Assembly: GCA_965235115.1 (NCBI GenBank)
Contig: OZ249440.1
Coordinates: forward strand, 2,790,001 to 2,854,000
DNA: 64,000 nucleotides
Origin: Laetmonice hystrix
Taxonomy: Eukaryota
Direction of reading: 5' to 3'
Within the stretch, counting starts at the first letter, position 1; the number at the start of each line of letters is the position of its first letter. The notes beneath the pieces were generated by a model. The model was not told the origin of the DNA. It did not search any database and saw nothing but the letters and a program-made list of their open reading frames with translations. A program made the translations under genes and the position numbers. Positions 5,667-58,780 of this stretch are shown one piece after another.

Positions 5667-5849
5667 ACTTGGCAAGTCACCTAGTCCTATAACAATCTGT
5701 AAAGGAGTATGTATGTACAGGAATCCATTAGATTTAACGGTAGGAAACTAAAACTAAAAGCTGTTGTAGTGCTGGCTTTAGTTTTGCCCCAAACTTGGGG
5801 CCAAAGGCCAAGCGCATGTTGTGAGCGATAATACAAGTACCATACTATA

Positions 5850-6098
5850 CACGCGCAGCGATCTGAGAAAAAGCACCTCTCAAACTTTGCTACCATTACC
5901 TATAAATATTAACGCGAACTTAGGAGTTAAAAAGTCACCAAAACAACTTTTTCACTCAGTAATAACTTATTGTTAACCTCACAAGAGCTCCGGGACAAGT
6001 CAGCGGGTTGTCTCAGTCCCAGTTTCTGCCGCTAGGCGGCTTCGTAAACTAACACCAGGTGGCGCCAGGTCTGTGCCCGCCAGTCCCGACCGACAGAA
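5850..6098. promoter_or_regulatory. Candidate bidirectional promoter between the METTL21-like gene (-) and SPATA24 (+)
   Basis: Divergent start codons are only 432 bp apart; GC-richer stretch containing CTCF-like caccaggtggcgc at 6053-6065. TSSs not determined. Confidence 0.5.
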
Positions 6099-42200: not shown

Positions 42201-45200
42201 TCTGCCCGACGTGTGTGGGCGGAGCTCCTACCAGGCACACCTGGTCCGGGGCCTGGCACGTTTTATTGGCTGCCAGGCGACTGAGCCTGACGTCACGGCC
42301 CATAACGAGGCTGCGCATGGCGTCCATACACCGCGCCGTGATGGACGAGGCGCGTCACGTCAAATATTGTCCATCTGTGTGTTCCCATCGCGCCACGCAT
42401 GCGCCATGCGTACGCTACGATCCGTCACGCCCCCGTGCGGCCAGGACCAGTATGACTGACGCCAAGTCACAGCATACTTAGGATCACTCATTACGGCAAA
42501 CAGCTTGGAATGCGATCGCTCCTGGAATTCACACACTCAGACGTGGGTAAATCGATCGCACTAATCACACAATGAAAGAGTCTACACACAACAAGCGCCA
42601 TGAAACGAGCTATATTTAGATCAATTAATCCAAAGCGTCCGCCCACTCAGTACCACGAGACGATACCGACAGGACGGACAAGCGTTCCACAAAACGCAGA
42701 CATTAATTTGTTTCCGCCATTAACAGGATATTTCTGACGTGATTTTCCCCCTATTTCATATGTTGTCTCTCGGTGTCAATGACGCCCATTCCGTCTTGGG
42801 TCCCAGAAACTGATCCCAGTTATTATAACGGTTATAGACCCAACGAAGCATACCGGTCATGGTCCAATAACCCTTCCCATACACTACAAGTCAGATCTTC
42901 GGAACGCCCGCCCCCAAGTTCCCCTGCCCCCCACACACCCCCACCGCGCTGCCCTGGACAACAGTTTGCCCCTGCTATATATAGCCCAAGCCTCGAACTG
43001 GCATGACAGCAGATATGATTGATGACGTTTTCCTAATACCTATTGAGGAAACAGTGACGGTGCTAGTCAAACATTTGCACACCCTGAGACTTGTAAAATG
43101 GAGCAAGCCATCAGGGAATCGGCTATTCGGTTACGGTGGAGAACAATTCCAATTCGACGGGAAATGAGGGAGAGGCAGTCTCTTGTATATGGATGGGCCC
43201 ACCACAACGATCCGACTCCAATCGATTTATCGGTTGTTCTAACGTTCCGCGCGTCTCAAGGCTGCCAGCCCAGTGGTGGCCGTTTTGTATTATAAACGAT
43301 ATCATAATTAGACAAATTTAACCGGCGCAATGTTTGGCATGGTATTGCCTTTAGAGCTTAACGAATAATATCAGCTACTTCAGAACGTAGACTCCCCGGT
43401 CGCCAACCGGGACTGTATTCATGAAGCGAGACTTAAGGACATAGGACACGCGAGCCTCACACAATACACGCCAGGTGTCGCTTCTAGTGGAGATCCTGCA
43501 CCGGATGGACGCTGACATTGCGTTTCATTCACAGTATTTGAGGGAAGGTGAAGAAGTACCGTTATTTTACGTAATGTCACAGAAAATGTAAATTTCCACT
43601 AAAGGAGATGGCAGTACAGACCTTAGCTCTATAAGGGTAGACTATTGGAGTCTACGTCTTACATGCATGTCACACAACCTAGCAATGGGTTTACAAATAA
43701 TAGGCGAGAAAATCACATGAAAAAAAAAAACCTTTGGTAAGTGAAGCTTGAAGACAATATCTGTTGGGTGGGGGTTCAAGCTCTGTAGGCCTATACATCT
43801 AATCACACACACAGGTAGGCCTACCAGCCTACGTACCGATAGGCGTATCGTGCACGAGACACTGTTGGGATAGCTTACAAGGCATGGTAGGCCTACAAAC
43901 TCAAAAATTTTTTGATCACAGGTTTATAACATCAAGGACAACTATTCTCGGTGTGGTCACTGTGACCATGCACCACACACGGCACATCGAGAGGTGTTAA
44001 TACTAGGCATGGCAGGTTTGCACCCACTCTCAGCGTCTGGGTTACATGATTTCTTCTGCTGCAACTAAGGGAACGCCTGGTCGGGTTAGTACTTGGGTTG
44101 ATAGCATGGGTAAGGAGACGATACACAGAGGTTGGACGCACGGTGGGGTGCGTATATATGGGGCACAAAGCAGGGTAATCAGGCTAGCCATGGTCCTCGA
44201 TGGAGGGTTACCGCAACACCGCCAGTCGGTGCCATCAGAGTCACCTGGTGGGACTACATGGAACCACCACCACAGTCTGCTGAGACGGGAAAGTTGTCAA
44301 CCACTTCGACCTCCTTCTTTGGAGCTCTCACTATTACGGCTTTACGCCCAGACATTTTCTCATATTTCGGTTTCTATCATCACCAAACCTTAAAACTATG
44401 TCAGAAATCTCGTTTTAAATGTAAAATTACACGATTTTTGAATCAGTTCTCTCAATTCGACAGTTTCTACTGTGGCGGTGGTGAAAGCTACCCCCTGGTG
44501 GCAAACCCCGACATTACGGTTAGTGCGAACCGTCCCTGTTAGAGGGCGCTGCAGGCTGGCAGGCAGGGTACCTGTGTGGTAGTTTCCTGCCGGAACGTTT
44601 GCTCAGTGCCATCTTCAGAGGCAGTCATTTCTACCTCCTCCCGGGTCCGCTGTTCAGTAAGCATGTTGCCATCCCATTCCTTAGTGGCCGTTTCTGTTAC
44701 CTAGCAACGCAGATGCGGGGAAGCAGGGAGAGAGAGAGAAAAGTCCAGACTTACATTACGACTGAGGAATAAGGAAGGATGATTGCAAAGTATACAGTAA
44801 AGTGGTTGCCAACGTCACAACACCAGAAAAAAACACATCTGAGTGAAAATATATCAAGGCTGATACATTTCCTGATTTGTTTTCCTGATTACAAAAGGAT
44901 TTGGTATACTAGAAAATCTATTCCCTTTTATAAAGAAAAGTTTTCTGCCACAGTTTTGGTTGTTTCCTGGAGATTGTTCCGCTGGCAACCATTACAGAAG
45001 TCTCTGACAGCTCTCCCGGGGGAGCATAGAGCATCAACACCAGTGGAAACAAAAGGTAGATCAATAATTTATACATCAATCTGCTGACTCTGGCAGACAG
45101 ATCCCTTCACGTGCGGAGTGTGGAGGATCGCAGTGGACGGTTTCAACCTTCCACCGTTCCTGTTGTTGGATGGGTGAAGCTTTCGTTAATAAATCAGTAC

Positions 45201-48200
45201 TCGGTAACCATGGTAACCGTTGCTGGATGGGCGAAGCTTTCGTTAATAAATCTGTACACGGTAACCATGGTAACCGTTACTGGATGGGTCAAGCGTTCGT
45301 TAATAATCTGTACACGGTAACCATGGTAACCGTTGCTGGATGGGTCAAGCGTTCGTTAATAAATCTGTACACGGTAACCATGGTAACCGTTGCTGGATGG
45401 GTCAAGCGTTCGTTAATAAATCTGTACACGGTAACCATGGTAACCACGGTGACCACCCACGTACCTCCATCACTACAGGTACTCCACCCAAGCGGTTGCA
45501 GCTGGTAATGCCGCCAGGGCCCGGTTTTTAAAAGATTAGGACACCAACAAGTTCTTTCCTGGGTTCTGATTGGTTGGTTATACTTGACCAGCAGCCAATC
45601 GAAAGCCCAGGGCAACTTAAGGTCCTCATCTTTACAAATCGTGCCCTGATGTCTTAGTTAGTGGATACTTATTAATAGGAAGCGTGTATTTTCTGGTTAC
45701 ATGTAGGTTAATTATTTATCCATGTTTTGGAGGTTTTTATTTTATTTTTTATTTTTGGGGTTGAAGTACTCGCAACTGCTTTAAGTTGTCCCTTAAATAT
45801 CCGGTTTGTAGGTTGTGAAGCAAGTGTGTAAGTTAATCACCAGGTGGCGTCTCGGATTATAAATGTCTTAATTAGGTCAAGTCATGCAGTCTCTTATTGC
45901 TGGGATCTGATTGCCTTAATATCGCTCAGTGGGCATTCCAAGCCGGGGTCCAGCGCCGGGCGTACATGAGTGGGGTAAAATGCCAACCTGTTCGCCGGAG
46001 GGACCTGTGACCTCGACCCCCGGCCCTGCCGACCGCGTGTGGGCCCATAATCCGTCGACAGGCGACATTGGCGGCCCCTCAGCCTCGTCCTGGCGGCCCA
46101 ACTGCTGTGGTTGGTCCAAATATAGGTCAAAGTTCGGTCACTCTGTTTTTTCTGGGTCAAATCACACGTGGTGTTTCGCTTACCCGTTACACATGGTGAT
46201 TATACAGAGTATAACTTAATGTTCTTTTCCGTCGTGATGGAATCTATCCATCCGTCGGCCCCAAACACTTGACATCAACACATAGGAAAGGTCAACACTG
46301 AATTACAACGCCATGCAAATACTCAATCGGGGAGAGCAAGCTTAACAACACCAACCACAACCAACATTTCCTGCCTGTCCCACCACAAATACTCCCAACT
46401 TTACCAGCTTTTCATTCTTAACACTTGTCTAATTCTATTCTCCGACGAAATGTCGACCTTAATCTTTTTCCTTTTCCTTTTCCTCAATAGTTATGTTGAT
46501 AATTTACAATGTACTCTTACAGGTAAAAGGCTGCATCTCGTAGGCTACCTATCTGAGCAGTATGTTAATTTTGGACAAATTATAGTTCTATAATTAGTCC
46601 AAGCTTTAGGAGAATTCTTCTGCTATCCGTTCGTATTTACAAACTTTCCGCGTGTTTACAGCTGAATCCTTACATCCAAATTATCTGCATAATATCGCCA
46701 AGGTCATTGAAGGTCACCAAAGGGACAGTAAGGACTTCTCGTGTTCTCTCTACTAAACAAAGGCAAAACGAATCAATGGAAGAAATATGCAATCTCAGAG
46801 AGTAGGAGGCAAGGGTAAACTAGAGGGTGGGAACTTGTAATAGTGGCCCAACTTCTCGCCAGGATAAGATCTGAATGAATCTAAAACAATTTAAACAGAA
46901 AATAACATTCTGTGACGTAAAGGGCATGCAAACTAGCACGATGCCATGACGCTAGAGAAATCTGAATATGACTTTCTGATTCTGGTTTTGGGAAGACTTG
47001 TTCACAGTGGTCTCATGCTGTTCCTTTCAATCTGAAGATTTAGATTTCTTAACATTAATACTCAATCTGTCTGGGATAAACTGGGATGAGATGCTATCAT
47101 GCTATCAGACATCACTGTGGCGAGACCCACGCCCAGGGTGATGGAGTCTGTCAGGGTACTGATCTAAATGTACACATCCACTACAGGAACTTAATGTAGA
47201 GTCTGTATCTACACATAACCCCTTGACCTTACATGACCCCGTAACCTTACATCTAGGTCCCCACCTGTGCCCGTGGAGGTTTGGGTGGGGCATGGCCTTT
47301 TGGCAACGCACCCATGTCAGCTACGTCTTGGGCTGCAAACTGGGGGCAAAAAGGGCAAAAGATTACACATTTCTCCCATTGTTTCAGTCAAAACTTACAA
47401 ATTCCGTCTTCAAAAACTTTTCTCCAATTGGAGTATAGTTTGCACAATATATACAGTCCAAATGTACAAGTTTCTGACGTGACCTATCTGAACATGAACC
47501 ACCAGATATGACACAGATAATGTTGCTAGGCCGTCCAAGCGCCTTACGACTACAAGGCCAACCTGTGTCTGCTGGTGTGGGGACATTGCAGTGCGGTCGT
47601 CGGACCGCCTCCCGTACTGGGTAGCGGCGAACGCACCCGAGCTGGGCGATAATGGGGCGAGGTTCGCCTCACCATACTGGTCATATTGCTGGCAGTAGAC
47701 AAACGAGGCTTTCTCTTAGTGTCATAAACTCTAACAGTAGCACGTCACTCTCACGGCAAGGGAACTGCTTATGTTTGTGGATTTTCTAGGTTTTACTTTT
47801 ATAGCATTAAGATAATGGTTCTTTTATCAAGTAAATACTCGAATTAAATGAAGAAAACGTAATATAGCACATAGACCGCTCGCAGAATTGTGCTACTTAA
47901 CCAAATTCATTTCTTAAACATACCAAATTGAAATTTGTTGTATCCTTAAACACTTCAAACGAGCAAAGATGAAAAAAGCCAAAAGCCATACAAGACTGAA
48001 GATAACAAACAGAGCCGAAGCCAAGCCTGTTCGCATAGTTTCAGATCGCCCACCTGGGAGCCGGGGGGTCGGTTCAAAGATTTGTCGTCAGTCTGACGGC
48101 CAAACTGGCCCCCATCAAACTGGCCAAACATCGGTGACGTCACGCCACGATTCGATTCACCATACTGGTCGTATTGCTACGATATGACATAAACATGCAG

Positions 48201-51200
48201 ACCGTCACCGATCGTATCATTCTCCCGACTTCCTAACCGAGTAACTGCATTGAACTGCCTTCCCCATTGATAATTACAGGGTGTCAAGTACCAATGACCC
48301 TCAAAAAAATAGGAAAATAGGAATGTGCTGTCCAAAAAATAAGAATAAAATAGGAATATCAAACAAAAAATATATGGAAAATAGGAATTTTTTTAAATAG
48401 TCAGTTATCTTTTTTGACTAATTTTTGAGATTTTAAAGCTTAAGTCTTTATAAAAAAAATGTCCAGCGACGAGGTGGTCTTCACTTTGGTACCATTTATT
48501 GAAATTCACGCAATTTTACGGATTATAAAAATCGACTAAAGACATGTTTAGGAATATCTTTGGGATCTGCCTAAAAAATAGGAAGTTTACTCCAAAAATA
48601 GGAAAAGTAGGAATAATGCTGAAAAATAGGAAAAAATAGGACCTTGACACCCTGCAATTAACATCCAAGGTAGGAATATCTTGTTCTACTAAAGTTTTGA
48701 TTCACTTATCTTACAGGAGACATTTCGTAATCCGTCAGAAACTTTTTGGAAGGACTGCATTTACTGTACCGGATCTTTCCTCAGTTTTCTATCAATGTTA
48801 GGCTACCATTTTAAAAGTGGTCCCCACATGTCTGTACTTACAATTTACTTTTCTCTATTTGTCATGTTTTGGTCCAAATGATAAATGTTTTTATCTGATC
48901 TTAATTACTTAGATTTAGAAGCGACTTATTGCTAGATGCCAACCTGTGAACCGGGTGGACGGTTTAAAGATTTGTCGCCGGGCTGACGGCCGTACTGACT
49001 TCCTGCAAACTGCCCATACAGCGGAGATGTCGGCCCACGGCCCGACTCGTCGTACTGGTCGTATTGCTGGTGTTGAAATATCAAAACTTTTTGTCTTTTC
49101 TCCTTTTAGGGTGTGTGTATCACTTTTTATTTTTACTTTTTGTTTAAAGTTATATTTCTAACCAAGTTGGGTTGTGGTTTTCACTGCATCCCCTGTTTTA
49201 TTATATGATATATTATATGATATTATACGACATATTATATGATATTTAGCACAGTCTGTTGGCCGTATAGAGTTTGAGAGAGAACTTAATACTAAGGTGC
49301 CAACCTGTGAACCGTGTGGACGAGTTAGAGATTTGTCGCCGGGTTGTCGGCCATATTGTCTCCCGGCAAACTGACCGTACATTGGCGAGGACGGGTCACG
49401 ACTCGATTCATCGTACTGGTCGTATTGCTGGCAACAAAAGATGTTATGCATTCTACCTAACTCCACAAAAATCAATAAATTAACATGACATTATTTATAA
49501 AAGTATTAAAACATGTGTAAAAACTACTGCGGGTATAAAATTGTATTCTTCAAAATGAAAAACAATAAAAATGCCAGTCTAAACTATCATACGGGATATA
49601 AGATTACATGACCTTGAGCCATTTCAAAACGTCTGTGTTGCTATTCTTAACCCTAGGTCAAACCTGTGACCCTTGTGGCCGGAAGTGGAACCGTGAATCC
49701 CCCTGCCCAGCAAAGTCATTCCTGCCCATTTTCCCCGCCAGGGGTGACGTAAACCCAGCCTGAAGCTCGCCGTATTGGTTGTATTGCTATAGAGATCAAG
49801 ATATTCTCATAACTAACGGCTCCAACTAGGTCAACAAACTAGGTCAAACTCATCCTGTCACTGTCCCAGTTACAGGGTTTTCCCGCACACAAAATTAACA
49901 TACAAAAACAAATCTGAAAACAAAAATGACGTGAAGCAGTAGCAGATATTCAGCTGGCCGTGCTGTTACATCCTCAACCCGTCCTTCCTCAACTCCCTCA
50001 AAGTCTCAACGTTACCAGGCAACGGTCACACTTCTGCCTTCTCTTTCACGTGGGACGTGAAGGTCACCTTAACCTTGGGGTGAGTACCACACTGGATTCA
50101 CGCTAATATTGATCCCTTAGAATGTTTAATCCATGCGTTTCGGTGATTAGAGCCGTCAATGCCTGATCACCCTGGTGGCCAAAGAAGGAACCAGTGGATG
50201 TTGAGAAACGCTGAAGTCAAGCACTTCCTGTGAACGTTGACATTTTGACGGAGGTCAGAGGTCAACCCAATTACCTACACCCATCTACAACCTATTGTCC
50301 AAACCTTACCCTACGTTCTTATCAGATTCACAGCGAATCAATATAGCTACCCATTGAAACAAACCACCACAGCTCTGCACGGATGCTTTCAATTTCCCTT
50401 TCCATTCCAACCTCTGCAATGGGGAAAATTGAAAGATACATTCCAACTACAGTGTAAGTCATGTTGAAACCCATAACTTCTCAAACTGAACATATACCAA
50501 AGATAATTTCTCCGAATTCTTCTGGCCTGGCTGTACAACCGGGTCGAAGTCACCCACAAATGATTTTCTGCTCCTAACTTGACTGACAAAGGTCTAGGCG
50601 ATGTCAATACGAAATCCAAGGTCAAGGCCATAGCCGGCTTACACTGTAGTTACCCTCCTCCACCAGTTTGTTTCAAGGGGATTAAAGGGTTTCCAGTTCG
50701 CATGCCCCAAGACATCAGTGAGCTGAGTGACCGCTACGACCGACCGACCCACACGGCCAGCGGTCAGACCAGGCGTTACCTAAACGACGACTCGGAACCA
50801 CTGCGTGCACGTCGTCCGTGACGTCACGTCACGTGACCCGCCATCGTCACGTGACCAAGAAAACATCTACAGCTCAAGGCAGACACCGACAAGCCAGTTA
50901 CTTCTATCAAAAGCTGAATGATGTTCAACGTCATCCTTATCTGGGTATCATAGATAACAGCCAATACCATGTAATATCAAAACATGGAACTTTGACGGAA
51001 AGGGTAACATAGATGTAAGGATGCTGCACCAATTTCTCAGTGATAGTTTGTCTTTAAACTTTCAAAAAACGGTCATCATTAAGAATATAGTATTCGAAAT
51101 GTTTTCATCCTTACTTTTAGGATCTGAATTGTACCCCCGATAAATATCACTCGTTTTGATTTTACCGTCTGGCAATCACCAAGATGATACTCTCAAGACG

Positions 51201-54200
51201 GCGTCCGTTGAAGCACTTCCCCTGTGTCGGTATCAGTTCTGTACAAGTTGTGACTACTTCAGGCAGACGTAGTAGAGACGTACACACAGTTAGACCGTAA
51301 CACAACCAGGCCGGACACAGACAGACATACAGATGGTGGTAGGGGAGAGGGGGTAAGGCGCGCCATCATCCCAAAGCCAGGAACGCTGGGGGTACGCGTG
51401 CAGGACAAACAAACGCCATGTACAGACAGGCTAACAGACTGTGGGGCAGACAGACAGACAGACAGTGGAGCAGACCTGTTTGCTCATCGGCCCACCCCGC
51501 AGGGCCGGGTAGTGACCGCCCGTAAAGCCGGGTGACGTTGGTGACGTGGGGCCCGCTTCAGTCGCCCCGCTATACTCCTGGTAGGACAGTAACAAAGTGA
51601 CGGTGAGTGACAGTCACATGGTCGACCTCCCGACCATGGCCTGCGACCTCCCGACCATGGCCTGCGACCTCCCGACCATGGTCTGAGACCTCCCGACCAT
51701 GGCCTGCGACCTCCCGACCATGGCCTGCGACCTCCCGACCATGGCCGGCCAGAGGGTTACCAGAGGTAGCGGTGAAGACTTAGGTACTAGTGATGGGGTC
51801 GGCTGTGATAACATTAGTTCTGTCATGGAGTCATTTCTTACCACTACCGTATCAACACAGGATAGTTCTGATGTCATGTTTTGGTTTTGTTTTCGTCATT
51901 GCAGTCTCTGAGAGACCGTGGTATGATTTGACAGGTGTGGATAGGTACTGAGACGCTCAGGTAAATTACCTGTAACCTAAAGTAGTGTGGCTGGGAAGTG
52001 ACTAAAGGCAGTCGCAAGCGTCCAAGAATAGGAGTGGGTTTGCATTGACTGTTATGTGCTCACACGTATTTTACGATGACATTGGGTTGTTTAGTTTGAC
52101 AACTACGTCTTGCCATGCATCATGTGCTGGGGGTTCTCTTAAAAGTGGCGTGGTCTTCTTTGAATTTTTCAGGAGGAATAAGGTGGATTACTGTTCTTAA
52201 GTCATGGCTTAAGTCACGTCGGAACAATGATCACTTAAGTAAAATTGACTGAAATAAAAACATTAATATATGTCCAGGATTGTGATATCGCTCTCAGTGT
52301 CTGGAGAACAGTATCAGGAATAGAATGATAAATAAATACTTGTGATTGCATGTCTGTAACAATTACACAGGTCATGAATAACATCACATCCATCAGGTTT
52401 ATGCGATCAATAAACAAATATGCATGTAGGCCTACTGAACATATTTACCACATCACATTTATACATTAGGTCGTAATGAACAATATCAATAGTAACACAC
52501 AACAATTATATATCAGTTTATAATGATCAGTTAGAGAATACAATGTTGAATCTGTTCAATCAGTAATCAATAATCAGTACTCAGTAATCAGTATGACATA
52601 GAAACGTTTGCTGCAGGCAGAAGTATCCTCATCCACATGCATCTACGAGGGCATAGAAAGCTATCAGTGTTAGAACATGGAGAAGGTCTCAGGTCAGGGC
52701 AAGTTATCACAGTGGGGGAAATAAACGTTAATATCTACCCATCACAAAACTGGTACATACCAAGGTCAAAGGTTATACCGGGTACACCTAAAGTACCGAG
52801 TACTAAAATTGCCATTGTTTCACCTAGTTGAAAAATTTAGGTACCAAATCACATATTTCACGTATGTACTAAACGTGGAGGAAAAGGTATATATAATATG
52901 TCTCAATGTACACCATCAGGGTTAGTAGTATACATGTAGTGTACACTGTCAGGGGAAGTAGTAGTATACATGTAGTGTACACTGTCAGGGGTAGTAGTAT
53001 ACATGTAGTGTACACCATCAGGGTTAGTAGTATACTGTCAGAGGTAGTCGTTCACCTGTAGAAGAAAGGCTCAAGAAGTCTATAGACAAACCATGCCTCC
53101 TATATAACAAGGTACTCTGAGGTAGCGACAGTTTGGCTTACGTATCTGCGAGTTTGATATATACAGACTGGTGACAAAAATTCACAGGTCCTTGTAATTC
53201 ACCGAAAGAACTATTTAGGAAATGACAAATCTATTTCAATATTTCTATTAAGGTCCACCATGACAAAGAAGCCATACTTATCTTAGGTCAAAGGTCACAG
53301 TAAGCTGATGTGAAAAATTCTTTAGAGCAGGCCAGTTTTGCTGTTTCTATTTACGTTTCTTCTTGTATATTTTAGGATTGTTAAATGTCGTTGATTTTGT
53401 ACTTTTGTGTGAGTAACACTTTCATCAAATTATGTTTCACGGAAGGATGTGTTTCCAGAAAACAGTATGTTTCTCCCTCAAATGACCCGAGGAAGGTTGC
53501 CATGGCAACTGTGCGACCTTGATATAACCTTAACATCTTAAAGTTTGTTAGCAGAGAGATGGTAAATGTAAACTTACAGTGCCAAAACAATGGACTAGAA
53601 CAATCCTTGTAAGTGTGCGTTTCTAGTTATGTCTTACGTAATAATTGTTAGGATTATGTACAAGACTAACTACGGTCAAACTTGTTGTTAGTGTCCCCAA
53701 CATCCACGTAGAACTGGCGGGCGGTGACAGACATATAACATAACAATAGACGCTGTTATTTACAAATGGACGCGTGGCCTAACGCCTGTCACCATGGTAA
53801 CCACGAGATCAACGTTAGCGCCACTGATTCCAACCTCTACGTCATCGACCGACCGACCTACGTGCCGGTACGGACACTGGACAATACGACACCAAGCGGC
53901 AAGCCTTAACACTACGGTTCACACCTGCGTTCCTGGTCCGGCGGCCAGTCTGGTCTGGCCACCAGGGGTCGCTCCGTATTGAGGAGCCGCGTACTGGCCA
54001 GCGATGGGCGCCGCTCCCGGGCCGTAACGTTCGTCTGCTCCGCCATATACCTGCCCGGTTAAAATCACCATCAGCCTCACCCAATCTTTTACAGTTCTAG
54101 GGTTCCTTCTCCCGCCATCTCTATACGGGCATCAATACTTTCAACCAATACAGGTCTAACGATATATCTGCAATTAATTCTTGTTGAGAAATACTGAGAA

Positions 54201-57200
54201 TTATTTTTTTTACTTGGACTCTCCTTTATTGGTACATTGTTTTATCTTTACGTGATATATACAGCTAGGCCTATGTCGACTGTAAAAATAAAATGTTATT
54301 ATTTAATTTTTAAATTGTTAATAATCATGCTTGTATTATGTACATGTGCAGTTATATTTTGACAGCTAGATTCGACAGGCTGTGTCTAGGCTGCCGTCAG
54401 TCACGATGTGCAGTTATATTTTGACGGCTAGATTCGACAGGCTGTGTCCAGGCTGCCGTCAGTCACGATAACCAGATATCTACGATCATGCTACTTGGTG
54501 GTTAGTCCTAGTCTGAACACCTCGGGTGAACACTCATGAACCGGGTGAACACTCATGAACTGTCTCCGATGAGCTCAGACTTCCCATGGAAAACATTTCA
54601 ATCAGCAGCTTTGGTCATGATGTCTTTGGATAAACTGTTCTTTAGGTTTCTTTTCACAGACGACATAGATCTGTAGTTTCTGGATACTTGGATATTTATA
54701 CTGTATATTGTATACTGTACATTGTATATTCTATATTGATACTGTATATTTTATAGTGTATATTCTATACTGTAGATAGTATACTCTATATTATGTCAGT
54801 TTATGCCCTTGTGAGACATCTCGTTGTTTTTATAGATCAAAATGAATAAAGTTTGTTGTTGTTACCTATAAAGATAATCATGGACCGAGTTCCAAAAGTT
54901 TTATGTAATGTGTTTGATAAACAGAACAGCAAAACAAGGATGTTAATACTGAAGAGAACCTCTATGTACAAGCAAGCACTGTTAGATCGAGCAGACCGCC
55001 ACAGTTGAAGGTTGGAGGAGTTGTTTCTGGGTAGGTTGGAGAGTTTGGAGCCTGCACCATGCCCGGACCAAGTCCTAAACCCTGACGGTTTGAAACCAAC
55101 AACCTTAAGATCTAGGATAAAGAAGCTCGGCAGAGTGAGAAACGCCAGAATCCAGCAAGACATGTTGTGTGCGTCTTCGCTCTCACAATAACCGTCTCTG
55201 GTCTGGACAGGTCCCTCTGGTGGCGAAGATGGGTACCAACCTGGCCACCTTGCGGCGGTGCCTGGCGTGCCAAGTTGGGGTCGCTAGGGCGGTAGGCGTT
55301 GGGACCGTAGGCGTAGCCTCCCGGTATGGGTGACGTGGGCCCACCGTACACCTGGTGACTTCTATCATACACCTGGTGATCACACCCAGACACACGCACA
55401 CACCCGCGTGCAATATCAACCAGGTATGCAACATATGCAAACAGAACACAGTGCAGCTTGTGTGCGTCCACACAGCTAAATCAAGATCTAGACTCCTACA
55501 ACTAGCACACGTGACGAGCTTACTCTGGCTTGCTGTGTGGAGATTAAATCATGGACATGTATTCTCAGGGTCATGCAGATAAACCCAGGTACAAGGAAAA
55601 TTATTATTGACTTTTGGGAAATGTTCTGATTGTGTTGATAAAATGAAATGACTAGTGAGAATAAAAAGAAATACAAGTAAATAACTACAAATGTAATTTT
55701 TGTAAAGGGAATTTTTAAAAAGGTATCTTCATCGTTGTATTTAAATGGTCCTCGAAGCGGACAAAGTGTGAAAACATTATGTATACAACACACTCTGAGG
55801 TAATGGTGCACACAACCGCTGTGAATACATGTACAATGTTTTCTTTAGAATATTGGTATTTGTTTGTTATCTATTCTCAACAAACAAAACCTACAAGTGT
55901 TAAATTATATTTAGTTACATTATTCTAAGTAAAGGTGCCATTCAATAATATAAGGTTAGCGTCGATCACCAATCTTTGTTAAAATCAAACAGAAATTATT
56001 TGATGTAACAGAAGATTGCATTATGTGCATAAAATCATAACCTTAAATCTCTAAAGGAAATGTTTTACTTGGTGCAAATCAACACACAGAAGATAAGTTT
56101 TAATTTACTAGATTTTGTCAAAACACGATATCATATCTAGTGCTTTTTCATATCCTACATGCAGATCAATGCTATAGCTATGTTTGATAAATATATGATA
56201 TCATGAACCTCAGCATGAGATGCTAAAAAATTAGTTGAGTCCATCTCGGTTGGGTCAGAGTGAGATTTTTGTCAGAGAAATTCGAAGGTGTTTTTGAAAT
56301 ACTACTCAAAGTGCTGCACTGCAAAAGACGACTCAAACAAAAACTCAATATAAGGAAATCAAAATGATTAACAGAATTGTTACAAATTCTGAACTTTTTA
56401 ACTGATTTCCTTTCTTTCAAAAATTTTAATGAGCTGAAAGTTTCGAAACAAAAAGGGTTAACAAAACAGACACAAAAGGTTTTAAAAAGGAAGTGTTCTG
56501 TTTAGCTACTTCTGCTGGGTACCTGAAAACTGAAATAGAAAGAAAATCACCATCTTTATACTGGAGGGGGTCTGGGGTACAACGAGGCCCTTGTACAGGT
56601 AGTGCAGCGTCTATGTTTCACTCACCTGTTTTCCTGGAGGACCTGAGCGGCTGTAGTCTCCTGGTTGGCTGGCGTACTGACTCCCAGCGAACTGTCCCGC
56701 CATTGGATCAGCTGAGGTGCCAAACGTTACGTCCTGTCTGTCGAAAACTTGTCCGTACATGAGGTTAGGGTCGCGATCGGTGTAGGCGACCAGGTATTGA
56801 CACATGTGTGTGAACGTGTCACCCTCTTTGTCTGGTTCGTTAGCGTAGACCTCCAGACCGTACTCACCACGAGCTGGGAGTAGTACCGTCACGTAGATAC
56901 GGTTGTCTTGTTCACGTACGTTCACTGCCCTCTCCAGGGTGTCCTCATCCATGTTCTCCTTGTTGAGACGAGCGTAGAGCCTGACTGGGCGTGACTTCTC
57001 GAAGGACACCTCAGCACGGCCATTGGGTGCGAGTAGGATGGCACTCTCCTGGGAGGGTGTGAGACCATACTGACGGACCGGAGCTCCAGGACCCCAGTTA
57101 GAGTCCGAGCATTGCGGGTATGGATGTATGTCTCCTGCTGCCTGGTCACAGACAATCTTGTACTCACATGTCGCCTTGAATACATTCTCCACCTTGATAC

Positions 57201-58652
57201 GGTCCCCGACCTGCTGCGCGAAGATGGTCAGGTAGTAATTGCCCTCACGTGGTGCCCGGAAGTAGAACGATACACGTCCGTCAGCTGTCTCCTGGATGAT
57301 GTACCGTTTGAGACTGACCCCTTGGATGTTCTCCACCATCGCGTCACCGTATCCCAGTTTGAAGGTAAACGCTGCCATCTTGGTGTATCCAAGATGGAGT
57401 GCCAGGATTCCCTTGTTGGTATACATGACGCCCTGTTCCATGCCAATAAACTTCATACCCACCGTGAAGAAGTACGACTTGACGAGCGGGTAATCCTCAA
57501 AGTCGCCATGGGTTCGCGATGGGTAGAGAAGTTGCCATGTGGGATCTTCAGGACAGTGAGAGTAGCCGAGATGTTGTGGTTCCGGGATGAAGTAGAAGTC
57601 GTCATACTCGTAGACAAGGTTTTCTGGCGTGTTCCGTTCTGACTGGAGGTAGCGGGTCGCCCAGTGGCTGTCCACTAACTGCCAGTTTCCGTCGATAAAG
57701 ACAGCGTTCCAGCTGTGGTTGATTGGGCCCGAGGTGATGGGAGATCCAGGGCGGTACTCAACCCCCTTCGCCCAACCTGACAGCGTCACGCACGGCAACC
57801 CGGCATAGCTGTAGGTAACAAACATTCAACAGGTCATCAATATAGCGATTTTGATTTTAACCAATAATTGTTTTTTATCTTTTCAAAAACCTTAAGACTA
57901 CTCACTTAAGATGGGACGGTTTGAGAACAACTGATCCGCTACTTTTATTAAGTTACCATTAAGTCATGCATCTTAAAGGGAAATGTGAGTGTTCAAAGCG
58001 CCACCTAGTGAGTCGCGTTGGTACCACTGTGGAAATATGAGTATTCAAAGCGCCGCGTACTGAGCTTTAACAGAAAAATGGTTGGCTTATTTATGCAGTC
58101 AACTACTTTGATGTGGAAATCAGATCTTAGAAAGCCTTTATCTATTTAGAATATTGTGGCTATATCTTTGTACGGTATCACAGTTAGTACCTCGCAAGGC
58201 ATTCAAAGATGCGGGCGTATGTGGTCTTGCCGTCCTTAAAACCGTCGATGATTTGTTCGGGAGAGCCAGGCAGCAGGCTGTCGAACATGATCGTGTACAT
58301 ATTCTTGGTGGTCATCCATCGGAAAATGGTTCTGAAGGGGAAAAAATGACATTAGTAGAGTACAAACACACTTTGAGGCCAATACGGGATCACTGAACTC
58401 ACCTAAATGTCTCAATCTCTGACAACACCGTGCTAAACATCTGACCTTGCCGAGTATTTAAAAAGAGATAACTTTTCTCTGATGTCCAGTAAAAGGATTA
58501 ACCCATTTTTTTACGCTGCACGTGTTACTTTGATGTCTATTTCTATGACGACAGGGTCACACTGACCTTGCTTTCTCAAGGTCGTTGAAGTTCTTGCGAT
58601 GGATCAGGTTCCAGATGAGATCCCGGAAGGCGCGATAGTTTGTCCTTGCCTC
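10496..58652 (-). CDS. Hillarin/kyphoscoliosis-peptidase (KY)/LTD-1-like protein with two transglutaminase-like + Ig-like modules; whole-gene model, 5' end unresolved
   Basis: Phase-consistent GT-AG chain: 58567-58652, 58191-58331, 56626-57808, nine cassette-type exons (55372 to 45988), 44572-44700, 37996-38152, 13085-13347, 12752-12840, 12424-12564, 10496-12245. Total 5034 nt with no internal stop. Two adjacent paralogous genes are less likely because module 1 has no stop and splices in frame onward. Confidence 0.78.
12424..12564 (-). CDS. 141-nt exon of module 2 (AIFLWLCSK...RGQTTYAVVFETLC)
   Basis: ttctcag| acceptor, AG|gtatg donor, phase 2-2; homologous to 58191-58331. Confidence 0.88.
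12752..12840 (-). CDS. 89-nt exon of module 2 (VSKEQHSSFRDLVWHLIYARDITNELEKA)
   Basis: aacag| acceptor, AG|gtgagt donor, phase 0-2; homologous to 58567-58652; not in the ORF track. Confidence 0.85.
13085..13347 (-). CDS. Pro-rich exon preceding module 2 (TAPGG...PPPVPPKPFKDTDVFKNVDTHAVE)
   Basis: ttttccag| acceptor (phase 1), GAG|gtaggc donor (phase 0); 263 nt. Confidence 0.8.
14329..14682. repeat. 52-bp tandem repeat (~7 copies)
   Basis: Unit atacgttcacctccccatcaagttatttctctgagagagcggttccgggccc. Confidence 0.95.
17614..17747. repeat. 21-bp minisatellite
   Basis: caccaggcagcagtggcactg repeated ~5-6 times with decay. Confidence 0.85.
19101..19193 (-). CDS. Candidate phase 1-1 cassette exon (or alternative terminal exon to TAA at 19060) of the hillarin-like gene
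   Basis: Long polypyrimidine tract ending ccctttcag|; reads (G)SQGVTEVKDAAGGASPGSTKKTGMRTSRSY; weak A|gtaaca donor; phase matches the host intron. Confidence 0.35.
21689..22095. repeat. Compound minisatellite: 25-bp units grading into 29-bp units
   Basis: gctcagtcgttgtactgtgttgtaa x~7, then ggatacctcagtcgttgtgcagtgttaaa x~5; shared core ctcagtcgttgt. Confidence 0.9.
25023..25158. mobile_element. Short palindromic MITE-like element
   Basis: ~30-bp arms agacctggttcacattccagtcggcgactg / cagtcggcgactggagtgtgaaccagacct; no clean TSD. Confidence 0.55.
25742..26679. mobile_element. Palindromic CAGGGCC-type MITE whose centre is expanded into a 36/41-bp satellite
   Basis: Arms cagggcctcgttctcaaatactgaa / ttcagtatttaagaagatggccctg with inner cttaagct motifs; related unexpanded elements at 41378-41522, 45515-45648 and 58781-58962. 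Confidence 0.7.
25794..26621. repeat. 36/41-bp satellite (~21 copies)
   Basis: ttctgactggctggttgcag(tagacc/cc/caggcc)attcaatcagaaggt; each unit has TTCTGA...TCAGAA inverted ends. Confidence 0.95.
27297..27485. repeat. 27-bp minisatellite (7 copies)
   Basis: agtgccctgaaacaggtgcc(a/c)tctagc; source of the ALKQVPSSS ORF. Confidence 0.95.
27692..28879. repeat. ~29-bp C-rich/G-rich satellite (~40 copies), G-quadruplex-prone
   Basis: ccacacaccctgcccactccgcccccacc variants; source of the Pro/His-rich and Gly/Trp-rich ORFs in all frames. Confidence 0.95.
29266..29445. repeat. Degenerate ~25-bp minisatellite
   Basis: attcctaaactcct(c/t)tccctggagg repeated ~6 times. Confidence 0.75.
29473..30421. 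repeat. 98-bp satellite (~9.7 copies)
   Basis: catttagagtaaagcaatcaaagattcacacctcacagctaccacaatg...catcacccctggcgt, period 98 (29473, 29571, 29669). Confidence 0.95.
30498..30779. repeat. 35-bp minisatellite (8 copies)
   Basis: attacagttcactaacccacccacactctggcgtc. Confidence 0.95.
32933..33393. repeat. 117-bp tandem repeat (~4 copies)
   Basis: aacttgtaaacgcccgttctgtccgtagtgccgactgtcaatgc... period 117; source of the 39-aa periodic ORFs. Confidence 0.95.
34978..35474. repeat. 46-bp tandem repeat (~11 copies)
   Basis: ggttgtctgcaggtcaggctcctcaccttcactgaaacctatcatt. Confidence 0.95.
37996..38152 (-). CDS. Pro-rich linker exon of the hillarin-like gene (VTTRMEAVTVSGKKAPPPTAPKPGR...QAGP)
   Basis: gccactag| acceptor (phase 0), CCAG|gtcagt donor (phase 1), which joins 13347 in frame. 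Confidence 0.78.
38220..38804. repeat. 60-bp satellite (~10 copies); last unit split by an insertion and resumes at 40373-40395
   Basis: aaatcgtgtcgggaacggacctactcgggtttatagagaaacaaggacggataaataccg; source of the 20-aa periodic ORFs on both strands. Confidence 0.95.
38800..40372 (+). mobile_element. Non-autonomous Helitron/Helentron-type (HINE-like) element, ~1.57 kb
   Basis: Starts (a)acaag; 5' tatagccccca is inverted relative to 3' tgggggcta; 3' hairpin agcccccc-gttgt-gggggct; (GGAC)n microsatellite at ~40295-40340; internal ~460-bp duplicated core (39381/39844). Excision restores the satellite unit exactly. Confidence 0.75.
41378..41522. mobile_element. Palindromic CAGGGCC-type MITE (unexpanded)
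   Basis: Arms ctgggtccagtccctcaaaactt / aagtttaaggaaccgggccctg; central hairpin tctgattggttgg...ccagccaatcaga. Confidence 0.65.
42241..42327 (-). CDS. Candidate alternative first coding exon for a short, module-2-only isoform
   Basis: ATG-initiated MDAMRSLVMGRDVRLSRLAANKTCQAPDQ with CAG|gtgtgc phase-0 donor compatible with exon 38152; CpG-rich surroundings. Confidence 0.3.
44572..44700 (-). CDS. 129-nt phase-0 exon (VTETATKEWDGNMLTEQRTREEVEMTASEDGTEQTFRQETTTQ)
   Basis: Strong polypyrimidine tract ending gttgctag|, CAG|gtaccc donor; not in the ORF track; Thr/Glu-rich and continues naturally into VTTRME. Confidence 0.75.
45163..45446. repeat. 57-bp tandem repeat (~5 copies)
   Basis: gctggatgggtcaagcgttcgttaataaatctgtacacggtaaccatggtaaccgtt. 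Confidence 0.92.
45515..45648. mobile_element. Palindromic CAGGGCC-type MITE
   Basis: cagggcccggtttttaaaagatt ... atctttacaaatcgtgccctg; central ttctgattggttgg...cagccaatcgaa. Confidence 0.6.
45988..46104 (-). CDS. Array exon 9 (117 nt): QLGRQDEAEGPPMSPVDGLWAHTRSAGPGVEVTGPSGEQ
   Basis: accacag| acceptor, CAG|gttggc donor, phase 0-0; divergent member. Confidence 0.65.
47563..47688 (-). CDS. Array exon 8 (126 nt): QYDQYGEANLAPLSPSSGAFAATQYGRRSDDRTAMSPHQQTQ
   Basis: ctactgccag| acceptor, CAG|gttggc donor, phase 0-0. Confidence 0.8.
48054..48176 (-). CDS. Array exon 7 (123 nt): QYDQYGESNRGVTSPMFGQFDGGQFGRQTDDKSLNRPPGSQ
   Basis: atcgtag| acceptor, CAG|gtgggc donor, phase 0-0. Confidence 0.82.
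48277..48654. mobile_element. MITE with CAGGG termini between array exons
   Basis: Perfect 12-bp TIRs cagggtgtcaag / cttgacaccctg; flanks taatta / caatta (6-bp TSD, one mismatch); internal aaaaatagga repeats. Confidence 0.75.
48944..49066 (-). CDS. Array exon 6 (123 nt): QYDQYDESGRGPTSPLYGQFAGSQYGRQPGDKSLNRPPGSQ
   Basis: tttcaacaccag| acceptor, CAG|gttggc donor, phase 0-0. Confidence 0.85.
49305..49427 (-). CDS. Array exon 5 (123 nt): QYDQYDESSRDPSSPMYGQFAGRQYGRQPGDKSLTRPHGSQ
   Basis: cttttgttgccag| acceptor, CAG|gttggc donor, phase 0-0. Confidence 0.85.
49664..49786 (-). CDS. Array exon 4 (123 nt): QYNQYGELQAGFTSPLAGKMGRNDFAGQGDSRFHFRPQGSQ
   Basis: gatctctatag| acceptor, CAG|gtttga donor, phase 0-0. 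Confidence 0.78.
51476..51577 (-). CDS. Array exon 3 (102 nt): EYSGATEAGPTSPTSPGFTGGHYPALRGGPMSKQ
   Basis: tttgttactgtcctaccag| acceptor, CAG|gtctgc donor, phase 0-0; shares the GPTSP motif. Confidence 0.68.
51617..51744. repeat. 21-bp minisatellite (6 copies)
   Basis: catggcctgcgacctcccgac. Confidence 0.92.
52910..53035. repeat. ~30-bp degenerate minisatellite (~4 copies)
   Basis: gtagtatacatgtagtgtacactgtcaggg variants. Confidence 0.75.
53925..54050 (-). CDS. Array exon 2 (126 nt): VYGGADERYGPGAAPIAGQYAAPQYGATPGGQTRLAAGPGTQ
   Basis: cgggcag| acceptor (weak tract), CAG|gtgtga donor, phase 0-0; AGQYAAPQYG is homologous to AGQFAGSQYA/GQFAGSQYG. Confidence 0.72.
55241..55372 (-). CDS. Array exon 1 (132 nt; alternative acceptor gives 111 nt from 55351): VYDRSHQVYGGPTSPIPGGYAYGPNAYRPSDPNLARQAPPQGGQ
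   Basis: Two in-frame caccag| acceptors, CAG|gttggt donor, phase 0-0. Confidence 0.7.
56626..57808 (-). CDS. Large exon: TG-like core of module 1, two Ig-like repeats and the first linker repeat
   Basis: cctacag| acceptor (phase 2); SYAGLPCVTLSGWAKG...HSWNAVFIDGNWQLVDSHW...GNYYLTIFA...GEYGLEVYA; ends DPMAGQFAGSQYASQPGDYSRSGPPGKQ|gtgagt (phase 0). Confidence 0.92.
58191..58331 (-). CDS. 141-nt exon of module 1 (TIFRWMTTKN...KDGKTTYARIFECLA)
   Basis: ttttttccccttcag| acceptor, AG|gtacta donor, phase 2-2; not in the ORF track. Confidence 0.88.
58567..58652 (-). CDS. 86-nt exon of module 1 (EARTNYRAFRDLIWNLIHRKNFNDLEKA)
   Basis: tgtgttccag| acceptor, AG|gtcagt donor, phase 0-2. Confidence 0.85.
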
Positions 58653-58780
58653 CTGGAACACATGAAACAGGACGAATTGATGAAATCTTCCAGACTTTAT
58701 GGCATGTAGATCCCCCAAGGTGGCACTTACCACTACTTACAGCACACAAACCGGGCCCAGACCTCCACCACAACTCACCC

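What the first reader, a model, noticed from the sequence alone, without database searches (positions are those of the whole stretch)
45988..56700. Array of at least nine symmetric, tandemly duplicated exons forming a potentially combinatorial variable linker between two pseudo-transglutaminase modules
Seen: exons at 55241-55372, 53925-54050, 51476-51577, 49664-49786, 49305-49427, 48944-49066, 48054-48176, 47563-47688 and 45988-46104 are all 102-132 nt, multiples of 3, phase 0-0, AG/GT-bounded, stop-free and end in a Gln (CAG) codon. Five begin QY(D/N)QY and share SP..GQF(A/D)G.Q(Y/F)GRQ..D(K/R)S..RP.GSQ-like motifs. The prototype repeat is the tail of the module-1 exon (DPMAGQFAGSQYASQPGDYSRSGPPGKQ). 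The flanking introns are not alignable by eye while the exons stay in frame, which implies coding selection. Inference: any subset can be skipped without frameshift (up to 2^9 combinations), tuning the spacing between modules, as in titin PEVK or elastin exon arrays. I know of no such array described for KY/hillarin/LTD-1 genes.
Basis: partly seen in the sequence, partly recalled or inferred. Interest (0 to 1): 0.85.

Follow-up and report, generated by a model that had tools for sequence, protein, structure and literature searches.

The report
Alternatively spliced repeat-exon linker in hillarin
A hillarin/KY-family gene of a lophotrochozoan animal encodes the flexible linker between its two modules as a row of short, duplicated, frame-neutral exons; RNA from the same specimen shows some are skipped, so this is a real but familiar kind of exon array in a gene family where none was described.

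Summary
All nine minus-strand exons sit at the stated coordinates. Each is AG/GT-bounded, phase 0-0, stop-free and ends in CAG. Together with the tail of the module-1 exon they form a 10-copy family of a 41-aa unit, found nowhere else in the 627-Mb genome.

One run of the same specimen (X4) behaves as RNA. It joins exons 48944-48054-47563 at exactly the predicted borders. It also shows three skipping junctions:
- 53925 to 44700, which skips seven repeat exons;
- 51476 to 49427, which skips exon 49664;
- 45988 to 38152, which skips the conserved 'WDG' exon.

The best-kept copies are under strong purifying selection (dN/dS about 0.1), while their introns are at random identity. A relative whose module-1 exon is 85% identical carries the same array with at least 15 repeat exons. 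More distant relatives have none.

- Module 2 starts near 13.3 kb, not 44.7 kb.
- The linker also holds three unrelated symmetric exons (75, 129 and 39 nt).
- Exon 49664 was seen only unspliced.
- 2^9 independent combinations are unproven.

Verdict: a new member of a known kind (titin-PEVK-like cassette arrays). Moderate interest.

The parts
56626..57808 (-). Large module-1 exon (Ig-like_KY domains). Its last 41 codons (56626-56748) are the prototype of the repeat unit. Donor is CAG|GTGAGT.
   Evidence: Pfam PF23265 at E 4.7e-44. The acceptor cag|C at 57808 and the donor were read. The tail matches the repeat profile at E 3e-12. AlphaFold2 gives pLDDT about 90 for residues 1-355 and about 30 for 357-394, the tail.
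55241..55372 (-). Repeat exon 1 (132 nt, VYDRSHQVYGGPTSP...), phase 0-0.
   Evidence: E 1e-15. No RNA was laid on it, because it lies outside the 6-kb stretch. A weak counterpart exists in the relative at L001 8343-8477.
53925..54050 (-). Repeat exon 2 (126 nt, VYGGADERYGPGAAP...), phase 0-0.
   Evidence: X4 contig 25 carries its last 47 nt joined directly to 44700. This type is expanded in the relative, with 59-65% aa identity to L001 9125 and 9926 and L003 2261.
51476..51577 (-). Repeat exon 3 (102 nt, EYSGATEAGPTSPTSP...), phase 0-0.
   Evidence: X4 contig 29 joins its 3' end to 49427; the loose end equals 51479-51508 with one synonymous mismatch. Ortholog at L003 3156-3245.
49664..49786 (-). 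Repeat exon 4 (123 nt, QYNQYGELQAG...). Most diverged QY copy; use unproven.
   Evidence: X4 skips it (51476 to 49427). The only contig on it (49510-49777, depth 13) runs unspliced through its donor, and read-through gives a stop straight away. pN to its sisters is 0.37-0.43.
49305..49427 (-). Repeat exon 5 (123 nt, QYDQYDESSRDPSSPMYGQFAGRQYGRQPGDKSLTRPHGSQ).
   Evidence: Acceptor used in X4 contig 29. 85% aa identity to the relative's exons L003 5471 and 6008, with dN 0.07-0.11 at saturated pS.
48944..49066 (-). Repeat exon 6 (123 nt).
   Evidence: X4 contig 28 joins 48944 to 48176, skipping 767 nt with CT..AC ends. dN/dS to 49305 is 0.07.
48054..48176 (-). Repeat exon 7 (123 nt).
   Evidence: Both of its borders are used in X4 contig 28.
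47563..47688 (-). Repeat exon 8 (126 nt).
   Evidence: The joint 48054 to 47688 is in X4 contig 28. The contig then runs on for 1 shared G plus 68 nt that are not on the laid stretch.
47265..47339 (-). Candidate 75-nt symmetric exon, not a repeat copy (FAAQDVADMGALPKGHAPPKPPRAQ). Carries a PxxPxR-type proline motif.
   Evidence: AG/GT-bounded, phase 0-0 and ends in CAG. The PPKPPR(A/S)Q island is conserved in the relative at L003 7888-7986 while the introns are not. X4 has no cover here (depth 0).
45988..46104 (-). Repeat exon 9 (117 nt, QLGRQDEAEGPPMSPVDGLW...).
   Evidence: X4 contig 26 joins its donor to 38152; the loose end equals 38127-38150. Counterparts in the relative at L003 6952-7053 and 8865-8987.
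44572..44700 (-). Conserved 'WDG' linker exon (129 nt, VTETATKEWDGNMLTEQ...FRQETTTQ). Phase 0-0, ends in CAG, not a repeat copy.
   Evidence: tblastn to relatives. Borders read. X4 contig 25 joins it upstream to 53925 and downstream to 38152. Ortholog at L003 9922-10044. In relatives P0002, P0003, P0005, P0006 and P0008 this segment is part of the module-1 exon, with no intron.
41223..41261 (-). Candidate 39-nt symmetric micro-exon (GNEYSPYGKGPGD), donor GTAAGT.
   Evidence: Conserved in the relative with the same length and donor (L003 12461-12499). The tail of X4 contig 28 (1 shared G + 68 nt = 39 + 30) fits 47563 to this exon to 38152. This is inferred, because the letters were not shown.
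37996..38152 (-). Proline-rich exon (VTTRMEAVTVSGKKAPPPTAPKPGRGQQGREDELPPPPPELMEQQAQLQAGP). Shared acceptor for at least two upstream exons.
   Evidence: The 5' border is set by X4 contigs 25 and 26. The 3' border (CCAG|GTCAGT) is predicted only. Ortholog at L003 13408-13548. The motif DDLPPPPPELLQQQ lies N-terminal of the module in Patella hillarin isoform X2.
10496..13291 (-). Module 2: exons at about 13291-13067, 12843-12751 and 12566-12417, plus the large exon 12265-10496.
   Evidence: tblastn with P0021. The 589-aa ORF is, with homologues up to 92% identical. Transcripts of relatives (P0021, P0072, P0073, P0076) join module 1 to module 2 in one protein.
58190..58664 (-). Upstream module-1 exons (about 58664-58560 and 58333-58190), which hold the transglutaminase-like core up to GKTTYARIFECLAR.
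   Evidence: tblastn with P0021. Exact borders were not determined.

Best explanation
The region is the inter-module linker of one two-module hillarin/KY-family gene on the minus strand of a lophotrochozoan genome, probably an annelid.

Origin (inferred from the comparison of species): in this lineage an intron arose between the end of the module-1 exon (...GPPGKQ) and the ancestral 'WDG' linker segment. The last 41 codons of the module-1 exon were then duplicated in tandem several times. The unit is bounded by CAG on both sides, so each copy carries the exonic half of a donor (CAG|GT). Each copy is also preceded by an AG acceptor. Every copy is therefore a self-contained phase-0/0 exon.

Structure of the linker: nine such exons plus at least three unrelated symmetric exons (75, 129 and 39 nt). 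One unit per exon encodes a Gly/Gln/Pro/Ser/Tyr-rich, near-neutral, predicted-disordered peptide. The peptide has regularly spaced aromatic residues and an invariant (S/T)-P.

Splicing (shown): the exons are spliced at the predicted sites and are included differentially. One specimen holds at least three paths into the shared exon at 38152:
- 53925 to WDG to 38152;
- ... to 45988 to 38152;
- 48944 to 48054 to 47563 to another exon, probably the 39-nt micro-exon (this last step is inferred).
Exon 49664 is skipped.

Function (inferred): splicing sets both the length of the linker and the number of conserved motif units (valency) between two catalytically inactive transglutaminase-like/Ig-like modules of a cytoskeleton-associated scaffold. 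The weak donors (mostly GTTGGC) make the exons easy to skip.
For: Anatomy: borders, frame; profile; similarity confined to exon plus or minus about 10 nt; donors GTTGGC/GTGGGC/GTCTGC against GTGAGT for the module-1 exon.

Gene identity: PF23265. The nearest named homologues are annelid (Owenia fusiformis, 59-63%), then mollusc and flatworm hillarin/KY proteins.

RNA: X4 contigs lie only on exons. Their joints have GT..AG ends and are absent from the three DNA runs of the same sample. DNA depth is even across the stretch, so a deleted haplotype does not explain the skips. Loose ends map to 53927-53956, 51479-51508 and 38127-38150. Contigs 25 and 26 both stop 26 nt into exon 38152, exactly where two paths sharing 'ACAG' merge in a k=31 graph. 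Both paths therefore co-exist in the sample.

Selection: dN/dS is 0.07-0.11 with dS 1.1-1.7 among 49305, 48944 and 48054. Against the relative's orthologues dN is 0.07-0.11 at saturated pS, the same as the folded module-1 exon (dN 0.11, pS 0.80). Between the species only exons are conserved at DNA level.

Evolution: the relative (L001/L003) has at least 15 repeat exons in the same order of types, with a different type expanded. A third assembly has repeat exons 2.5 and 9.6 kb downstream of its module-1 ORF. Relatives at 72% identity or less have the WDG segment inside the module-1 exon and no repeat exons.

Disorder: composition is G 16%, Q 11.5%, P 11% and Y+F 10%, with net charge about 0, on the disordered side of the charge-hydropathy boundary. 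pLDDT is about 30 for the prototype unit.

One gene: X4 joins the array to exon 38152. That exon's motif precedes the module in Patella hillarin. Relatives' transcripts join modules 1 and 2.
Against: - There is only one RNA sample, and only assembled contigs. Rare forms are dropped, there is no quantification and no tissue or stage information. The run is not on record as RNA; its RNA nature is inferred from its behaviour.
- Only 6 kb could be laid. Exon 55241, the junction from the module-1 exon, and everything between 37996 and 13291 are unseen.
- The WDG exon shows a single upstream partner, which suggests a small number of discrete paths rather than free combination.
- The step from 47563 to the 39-nt exon rests on an arithmetic fit (39 + 30 nt), not on letters that were shown.
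- Function (length or valency tuning) is entirely inferred. No known domain or motif family matches the unit.
- The contig depths (28 to 198) are a poor measure of isoform ratio, by the tool's own caveat.
Confidence: 0.72

Rival explanations
1. Block switch: the gene makes only a few discrete linker forms. One is a short ancestral form (53925 to WDG to 38152). The others are one or two long forms that use the repeat block and bypass WDG. Exons are not chosen independently.
For: X4 contig 25 runs 47 nt into exon 53925 without branching, so the WDG exon has one visible upstream partner. Exon 45988 goes to 38152 without WDG. Three repeat exons are included consecutively.
Against: Contigs 26 and 28 stop exactly at the acceptors of 45988 and 48944, after only the shared CAG. 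In a k=31 graph this is what several different upstream partners would give. Contigs cannot show which junctions sit on the same molecule.
Confidence: 0.4
2. Fully combinatorial cassette use: each of the nine or more exons is included or skipped independently, giving hundreds of linker isoforms.
For: All exons are phase 0-0, so every subset is in frame. Donors are weak. Several distinct skip joints occur in one sample, and contigs break at acceptors.
Against: Only four junction classes were seen. WDG shows one partner. There is no read-level or long-read data. Exon 49664 is not seen spliced at all.
Confidence: 0.15
3. Essentially constitutive repeat linker: the skipping junctions are splicing noise or assembly artefacts among similar exons.
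For: The exons resemble one another, which can confuse assemblers. There is a single sample.
Against: Every 31-mer of a contig occurs in reads. The joints fall exactly on GT..AG borders and link non-similar sequence (53925 to WDG, 45988 to 38152). The depths of the skipping contigs (88-198) are not below that of the inclusion contig (28). The DNA runs of the same sample lack the joints.
Confidence: 0.08
4. Part of the array is decaying. Exon 49664, and possibly 55241 or 45988, are former exons that are no longer used. Their open frames survive by chance.
For: Exon 49664 is skipped or unspliced in X4. It has the highest pN to its sisters (0.37-0.43 against 0.08-0.15). A 41-codon open frame has a chance probability of about 0.14. 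The relative has degenerate copies without clean borders (L003 1006 and 6946).
Against: Exon 49664 keeps AG/GT, its frame and the profile match (E 6e-20). Exon 45988 is expressed at the highest depth. One sample cannot show absence.
Confidence: 0.45

Closest known systems
Titin PEVK exon array (vertebrates)
   Same: Many short, tandemly duplicated, frame-neutral exons, each encoding one unit of a disordered repeat between folded modules. Exons are included differentially to set the length of the segment. Copy number turns over between species (PMC6469411, PMC3575840; remainder is established knowledge).
   Different: The unit is 41 aa and Gly/Gln/Pro/Tyr-rich and near neutral, not the 26-28-aa Pro/Glu/Val/Lys-rich PEVK unit. 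There are about 9-15 exons, not more than 100. The host is a transglutaminase-like scaffold, not a sarcomeric spring. Unit sequence conservation is as high as in the folded domain. No mechanical role has been shown.
General rule: phase-symmetric exons encoding intrinsic disorder drive modular evolution
   Same: Symmetric (0-0) exons coding for predicted-disordered sequence, multiplied by exon duplication (PMC3632108).
   Different: That work is a genome-wide trend in human. This is a single lineage-specific case with RNA evidence and a comparison across species.
Mutually exclusive tandem-duplicated exon clusters (Dscam1, human MXE or 'tandem duplicated exon substitution' events)
   Same: Tandem paralogous exons of equal length and phase (PMC9741552, PMC5740500).
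   Different: Here three paralogous exons are joined consecutively in one RNA contig, so the copies are additive cassettes, not substitutes.
Hillarin / D-hillarin / LTD-1 / KY (transglutaminase-like plus Ig-like_KY proteins)
   Same: Same protein family and two-module layout. The transglutaminase-like domain of the family is described as catalytically inactive, and the proteins are linked to septins, actin and cytokinesis (PMC3718969).
   Different: Relatives whose transcripts or exons were examined have a 70-110-aa linker (P0021, P0072, P0073, P0076), or the WDG segment inside the module-1 exon. No exon array has been reported for them.

Membership tests
Hillarin/KY family (transglutaminase-like core + Ig-like_KY) | Ig-like_KY domain (Pfam PF23265) | tested here: met
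   E 4.7e-44, 150 bits against a cut-off of 27, for the module-1 exon. Homologues of both modules carry PF23265 with or without PF01841 and are named hillarin, KY or transglutaminase-like.
Hillarin/KY family (transglutaminase-like core + Ig-like_KY) | Transglutaminase-like core (PF01841) N-terminal of the Ig-like part; in this subfamily the catalytic Cys is lost | tested here: inconclusive
   The core is split over small exons, and single exons gave no Pfam hit. Homologous transcripts carry PF01841. Thr at the Cys position (GKTTYARIF, GQTTYAVVF), with His and Asp kept (HSWNAV, LVDxHWA), was read by eye only. PMC3718969 states that members lack catalytic residues.
Hillarin/KY family (transglutaminase-like core + Ig-like_KY) | Two tandem modules in one polypeptide | tested here: met
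   By homology and partial RNA. Relatives' transcripts P0021, P0072, P0073 and P0076 join the modules. X4 joins the array to exon 38152, whose motif precedes the module in Patella hillarin. No RNA was laid between 37996 and 13291.
Tandemly duplicated symmetric cassette-exon arrays encoding disordered repeats (titin-PEVK-like) | Tandem paralogous exons, one repeat unit per exon | tested here: met
   Ten-copy family.
Tandemly duplicated symmetric cassette-exon arrays encoding disordered repeats (titin-PEVK-like) | Phase symmetry, so any exon can be skipped in frame | tested here: met
   All nine, plus the 75-, 129- and 39-nt exons, are multiples of 3 in phase 0-0.
Tandemly duplicated symmetric cassette-exon arrays encoding disordered repeats (titin-PEVK-like) | Encoded segment intrinsically disordered | tested here: met
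   Prediction only: composition and charge-hydropathy, and pLDDT about 30 for the prototype unit against about 90 for the domain.
Tandemly duplicated symmetric cassette-exon arrays encoding disordered repeats (titin-PEVK-like) | Differential inclusion in RNA | tested here: met
   Three skip joints and one consecutive-inclusion contig, from one sample and from contigs only.
Tandemly duplicated symmetric cassette-exon arrays encoding disordered repeats (titin-PEVK-like) | Tissue- or stage-regulated isoform size with a mechanical or spacing consequence | not testable with these tools
   One RNA run, with no tissue record and no protein data.
Mutually exclusive exon clusters (Dscam-like) | Exactly one exon of the cluster per transcript | tested here: not met
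   X4 contig 28 contains exons 48944, 48054 and 47563 in series.

The most novel reading that the evidence does not exclude
The 41-aa unit is not a passive spacer. It is a conserved interaction module with evenly spaced Tyr/Phe 'stickers', an invariant Ser/Thr-Pro site and an RPPGSQ tail. Splicing would then dial the valency of a pseudo-enzyme scaffold, for example for phosphorylation-controlled multivalent binding or condensate formation at the cell cortex. Two lineages have independently amplified different sub-types of the unit (QYDQY-type here, VYGGADE-type in the relative), which implies recurrent selection for more copies.
Probability: 0.25. Interest if true: 0.7.

Novelty: new member of a known kind. 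Interest (0 to 1): 0.48.

Why it matters
It is a clean, datable example of how a disordered linker grows. The end of one exon became an array of self-contained cassette exons. The state before (distant relatives with no intron), the state after (nine exons here) and a differently expanded sister state (at least 15 exons) are all available for comparison.

The repeat peptides are as conserved as the folded domain. This points to a specific function in a protein family (hillarin/KY/LTD-1) whose molecular role is still poorly understood.

It is also a caution for annotation. None of the 1.84 billion representative proteins searched carries these repeats in a gene model, which suggests such arrays can be missed by gene prediction.

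Tried and rejected
- Both run searches, with an intron-rich stretch and with the 1.2-kb exon, listed no run on record as RNA. X4 was recognised as RNA only after it was laid.
- A word-index protein search with the 110-aa open piece around exon 49305 found no candidate.
- The profile search of 1.84 billion representatives gave only three true hits, all single-exon genomic fragments, plus two unrelated bacterial repeat proteins.
- Pfam on single repeat units, the WDG exon and the 75-nt exon gave nothing. Exon 38152 gave a sub-threshold CAP_N-CM hit (16 bits against a cut-off of 19), treated as proline-rich noise.
- A PDB sequence search with the transglutaminase-like core of P0021 gave only a weak FAP246 match (E 0.017). 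That is no use for checking the catalytic Cys.
- An alternative 3' end after exon 49664, to explain the unspliced contig, has no AATAAA or ATTAAA in that intron. The idea was left unexplained.
- The third species' contig (ERZ26222911) could not be read because its file is too large.
- Hemizygous deletion as the cause of the 'skips' was rejected. DNA depth is even and the DNA runs have no such joints.
- Mutually exclusive splicing of the paralogues was rejected (contig 28).
- I first took P0002's 434-aa ORF to be the 434-aa ORF on the ERZ26222911 contig, which would have put the repeats after a fused WDG segment. P0002's own contig (L004) shows no repeat exons, so the equal length is a coincidence.

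Full report
**1. What is there**

On the minus strand each of the nine listed intervals is preceded by AG and followed by GT. Each is a multiple of 3 (132, 126, 102, 123, 123, 123, 123, 126, 117 nt), open in frame 0 and ends in CAG. On the plus strand most of the intervals contain stops.

A profile of the nine finds only these nine in the window (E 5e-11 to 1e-22), plus the last 41 residues of the large upstream exon (E 3e-12). The same ten places are the only matches in the whole 627-Mb assembly. The aligned unit reads QYDQYDExxxGPTSPxxGQFAGxQYGxQPGDxxxxRPxGxQ. The Pro of (S/T)-P and the final Gln are invariant.

**2. The gene**

The upstream exon (56626-57808) is an Ig-like_KY domain exon (PF23265, E 4.7e-44). 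Homologues are hillarin/KY/transglutaminase-like proteins of annelids, molluscs and flatworms. The nearest named one is Owenia fusiformis at 59-63%.

A second module lies at 13291-10496. Transcript-derived proteins of relatives (P0021, P0072, P0073, P0076) join module 1 to module 2 through 70-110 residues.

It is the start of a 129-nt linker exon (44572-44700, '...KEWDGN...FRQETTTQ'). That exon is itself phase 0-0 and ends in CAG.

**3. RNA**

No run is on record as RNA. When the four runs of the single sample were laid on 44550-50549, three gave even genomic cover. The fourth, X4, covered only exons and carried intron-less joints with GT..AG ends that the DNA runs lack.

- Contig 28 joins 48944-49066, 48054-48176 and 47563-47688 at exactly the predicted borders.
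- Contig 25 is the WDG exon with 47 nt of exon 53925 upstream and 24 nt of an exon at 38152 downstream. This skips seven repeat exons.
- Contig 29 joins exon 51476 to 49427 and skips exon 49664.
- Contig 26 joins exon 45988 to 38152 and skips WDG.
- Contigs 25 and 26 both end 26 nt into exon 38152. That is the point where two paths sharing 'ACAG' merge in a 31-mer graph, so both forms are present together.
- Contig 28 runs on for one shared G plus 68 nt. This equals the 39-nt exon at 41223-41261 (which starts GG) plus 30 nt of a shared exon. The fit is inferred, not read.
- Exon 49664 is covered only by a contig that reads through its donor into the intron.
- Exon 55241 lay outside the stretch.

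DNA depth is flat, so a deleted haplotype does not explain the skips.

**4. Selection**

Among exons 49305, 48944 and 48054, dS is 1.1-1.7 and dN is 0.08-0.17, giving a ratio of 0.07-0.11. Flanking introns are no more alike than random sequence. Copy similarity ends about 7-10 nt outside the exons.

**5. Other species**

- A relative whose module-1 exon is 85% identical (pS 0.80, saturated; dN 0.11) has the same arrangement on two contigs (L001, L003). It carries at least 15 repeat exons, all AG/GT-bounded, phase 0-0 and ending in CAG (one, L003 8865-8987, ends in Glu instead).
- In that relative the types follow the same order as here: VYGGADE type, then 51476 type, then QYDQY type, then 45988 type. 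Orthologues of the 75-nt PPKPPR exon, the WDG exon, the 39-nt exon and the 38152 exon are interspersed and follow.
- There the VYGGADE type is the expanded one. Here it is the QYDQY type.
- Exon 49305 against its orthologues has dN 0.07-0.11, equal to the folded domain. Only exons are conserved at DNA level.
- A third assembly has repeat exons 2.5 and 9.6 kb downstream of its module-1 ORF.
- Relatives at 72% identity or less have the WDG segment inside the module-1 exon and no repeat exons. One (P0006) has an in-exon QQYP expansion instead.

The intron and the array are therefore a lineage-specific gain in a region that is evolutionarily labile.

**6. Nature of the peptide**

The composition is G 16%, Q 11.5%, P 11%, S 9% and Y+F 10%, with no Cys and net charge about 0. 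It falls on the disordered side of the charge-hydropathy boundary. AlphaFold2 gives pLDDT about 30 for the prototype unit, against about 90 for the domain. No Pfam family matches the unit.

**7. Mechanism**

*Shown:* the exons are used, and they are included differentially.

*Inferred:*
- The unit is flanked by CAG on both sides. The downstream CAG supplies the exonic half of the donor, which explains the universal terminal Gln codon.
- The intronic halves of the donors are weak (GTTGGC in five of nine, against GTGAGT for the module-1 exon). This favours skipping.
- The result is a linker of roughly 85 to 446 residues, with a variable number of conserved units.
- The unit is as constrained as the folded domain. 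I therefore favour 'number of motif units' over 'pure spacer'.

Whether the exons are chosen freely or in blocks is open. WDG has one visible partner (53925), which favours blocks. The contigs of 45988 and 48944 break right at their acceptors, which favours several partners.

**8. Comparison and novelty**

This works like the titin PEVK array and fits the general link between symmetric exons and disorder (PMC6469411, PMC3575840, PMC3632108). It is not a mutually exclusive cluster. The six papers in the library that mention hillarin describe no such array, and no representative protein carries it. Verdict: a new member of a known kind.

Noticed in passing
window 48150-48750 (intron between exons 48944 and 48054): A dispersed repeat with DNA contig depth of about 6000-11000, against about 60 in the flanks (roughly 100-190 genomic copies). 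It is also present in the RNA run at depth 110-400. Probably an expressed transposable-element fragment.
   Followed up: no
window 49510-49777: An RNA contig (depth 13) runs from inside exon 49664 through its donor into the intron, while other introns of the stretch have no cover. There is no polyadenylation signal in that intron. Unexplained: retained intron, or an unused exon.
   Followed up: partly
window 46310-46477: A 170-nt RNA contig (depth 13.6) lies colinear with the intron between exons 47563 and 45988, beside an indel-polymorphic spot at 46464-46473.
   Followed up: no
window 55372, 54050, 44700, 38152 (first bases of four exons): These exons begin with GT (GTGTAT, GTATAT, GTAACA, GTGACG). 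Joining them to a CAG-ended exon therefore rebuilds a 5'-splice-site-like CAG|GT. The matches at +3 to +6 are weak. Other notes on this genome mention recursive splicing.
   Followed up: no
window 4959-5675 (-): An intron-less 238-aa ORF with a lysine methyltransferase domain (PF10294 Methyltransf_16, E 4e-33).
   Followed up: partly
window 26000-38000: A GC-rich block (0.50-0.58) with strong negative GC skew inside the long intron between exon 38152 and module 2. It includes a C/A-rich minisatellite at about 27500-29000 and a 60-nt x 9.8 tandem array at 38220-38804, directly upstream of exon 38152. An internal promoter for a module-2-only isoform is possible: relatives P0062 and P0092 start with Met shortly before module 2.
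   Followed up: no
L005 9035-10954 (relative, ERZ25084518): In this species the same linker region expanded inside the module-1 exon as QQYP(G/A)G-type repeats instead of as separate exons. The ORF then reads into a 39-nt minisatellite in the intron.
   Followed up: partly
window 51479: The RNA contig has C where the assembly has T. The change is synonymous (AAA to AAG, Lys) and is presumably allelic.
   Followed up: no
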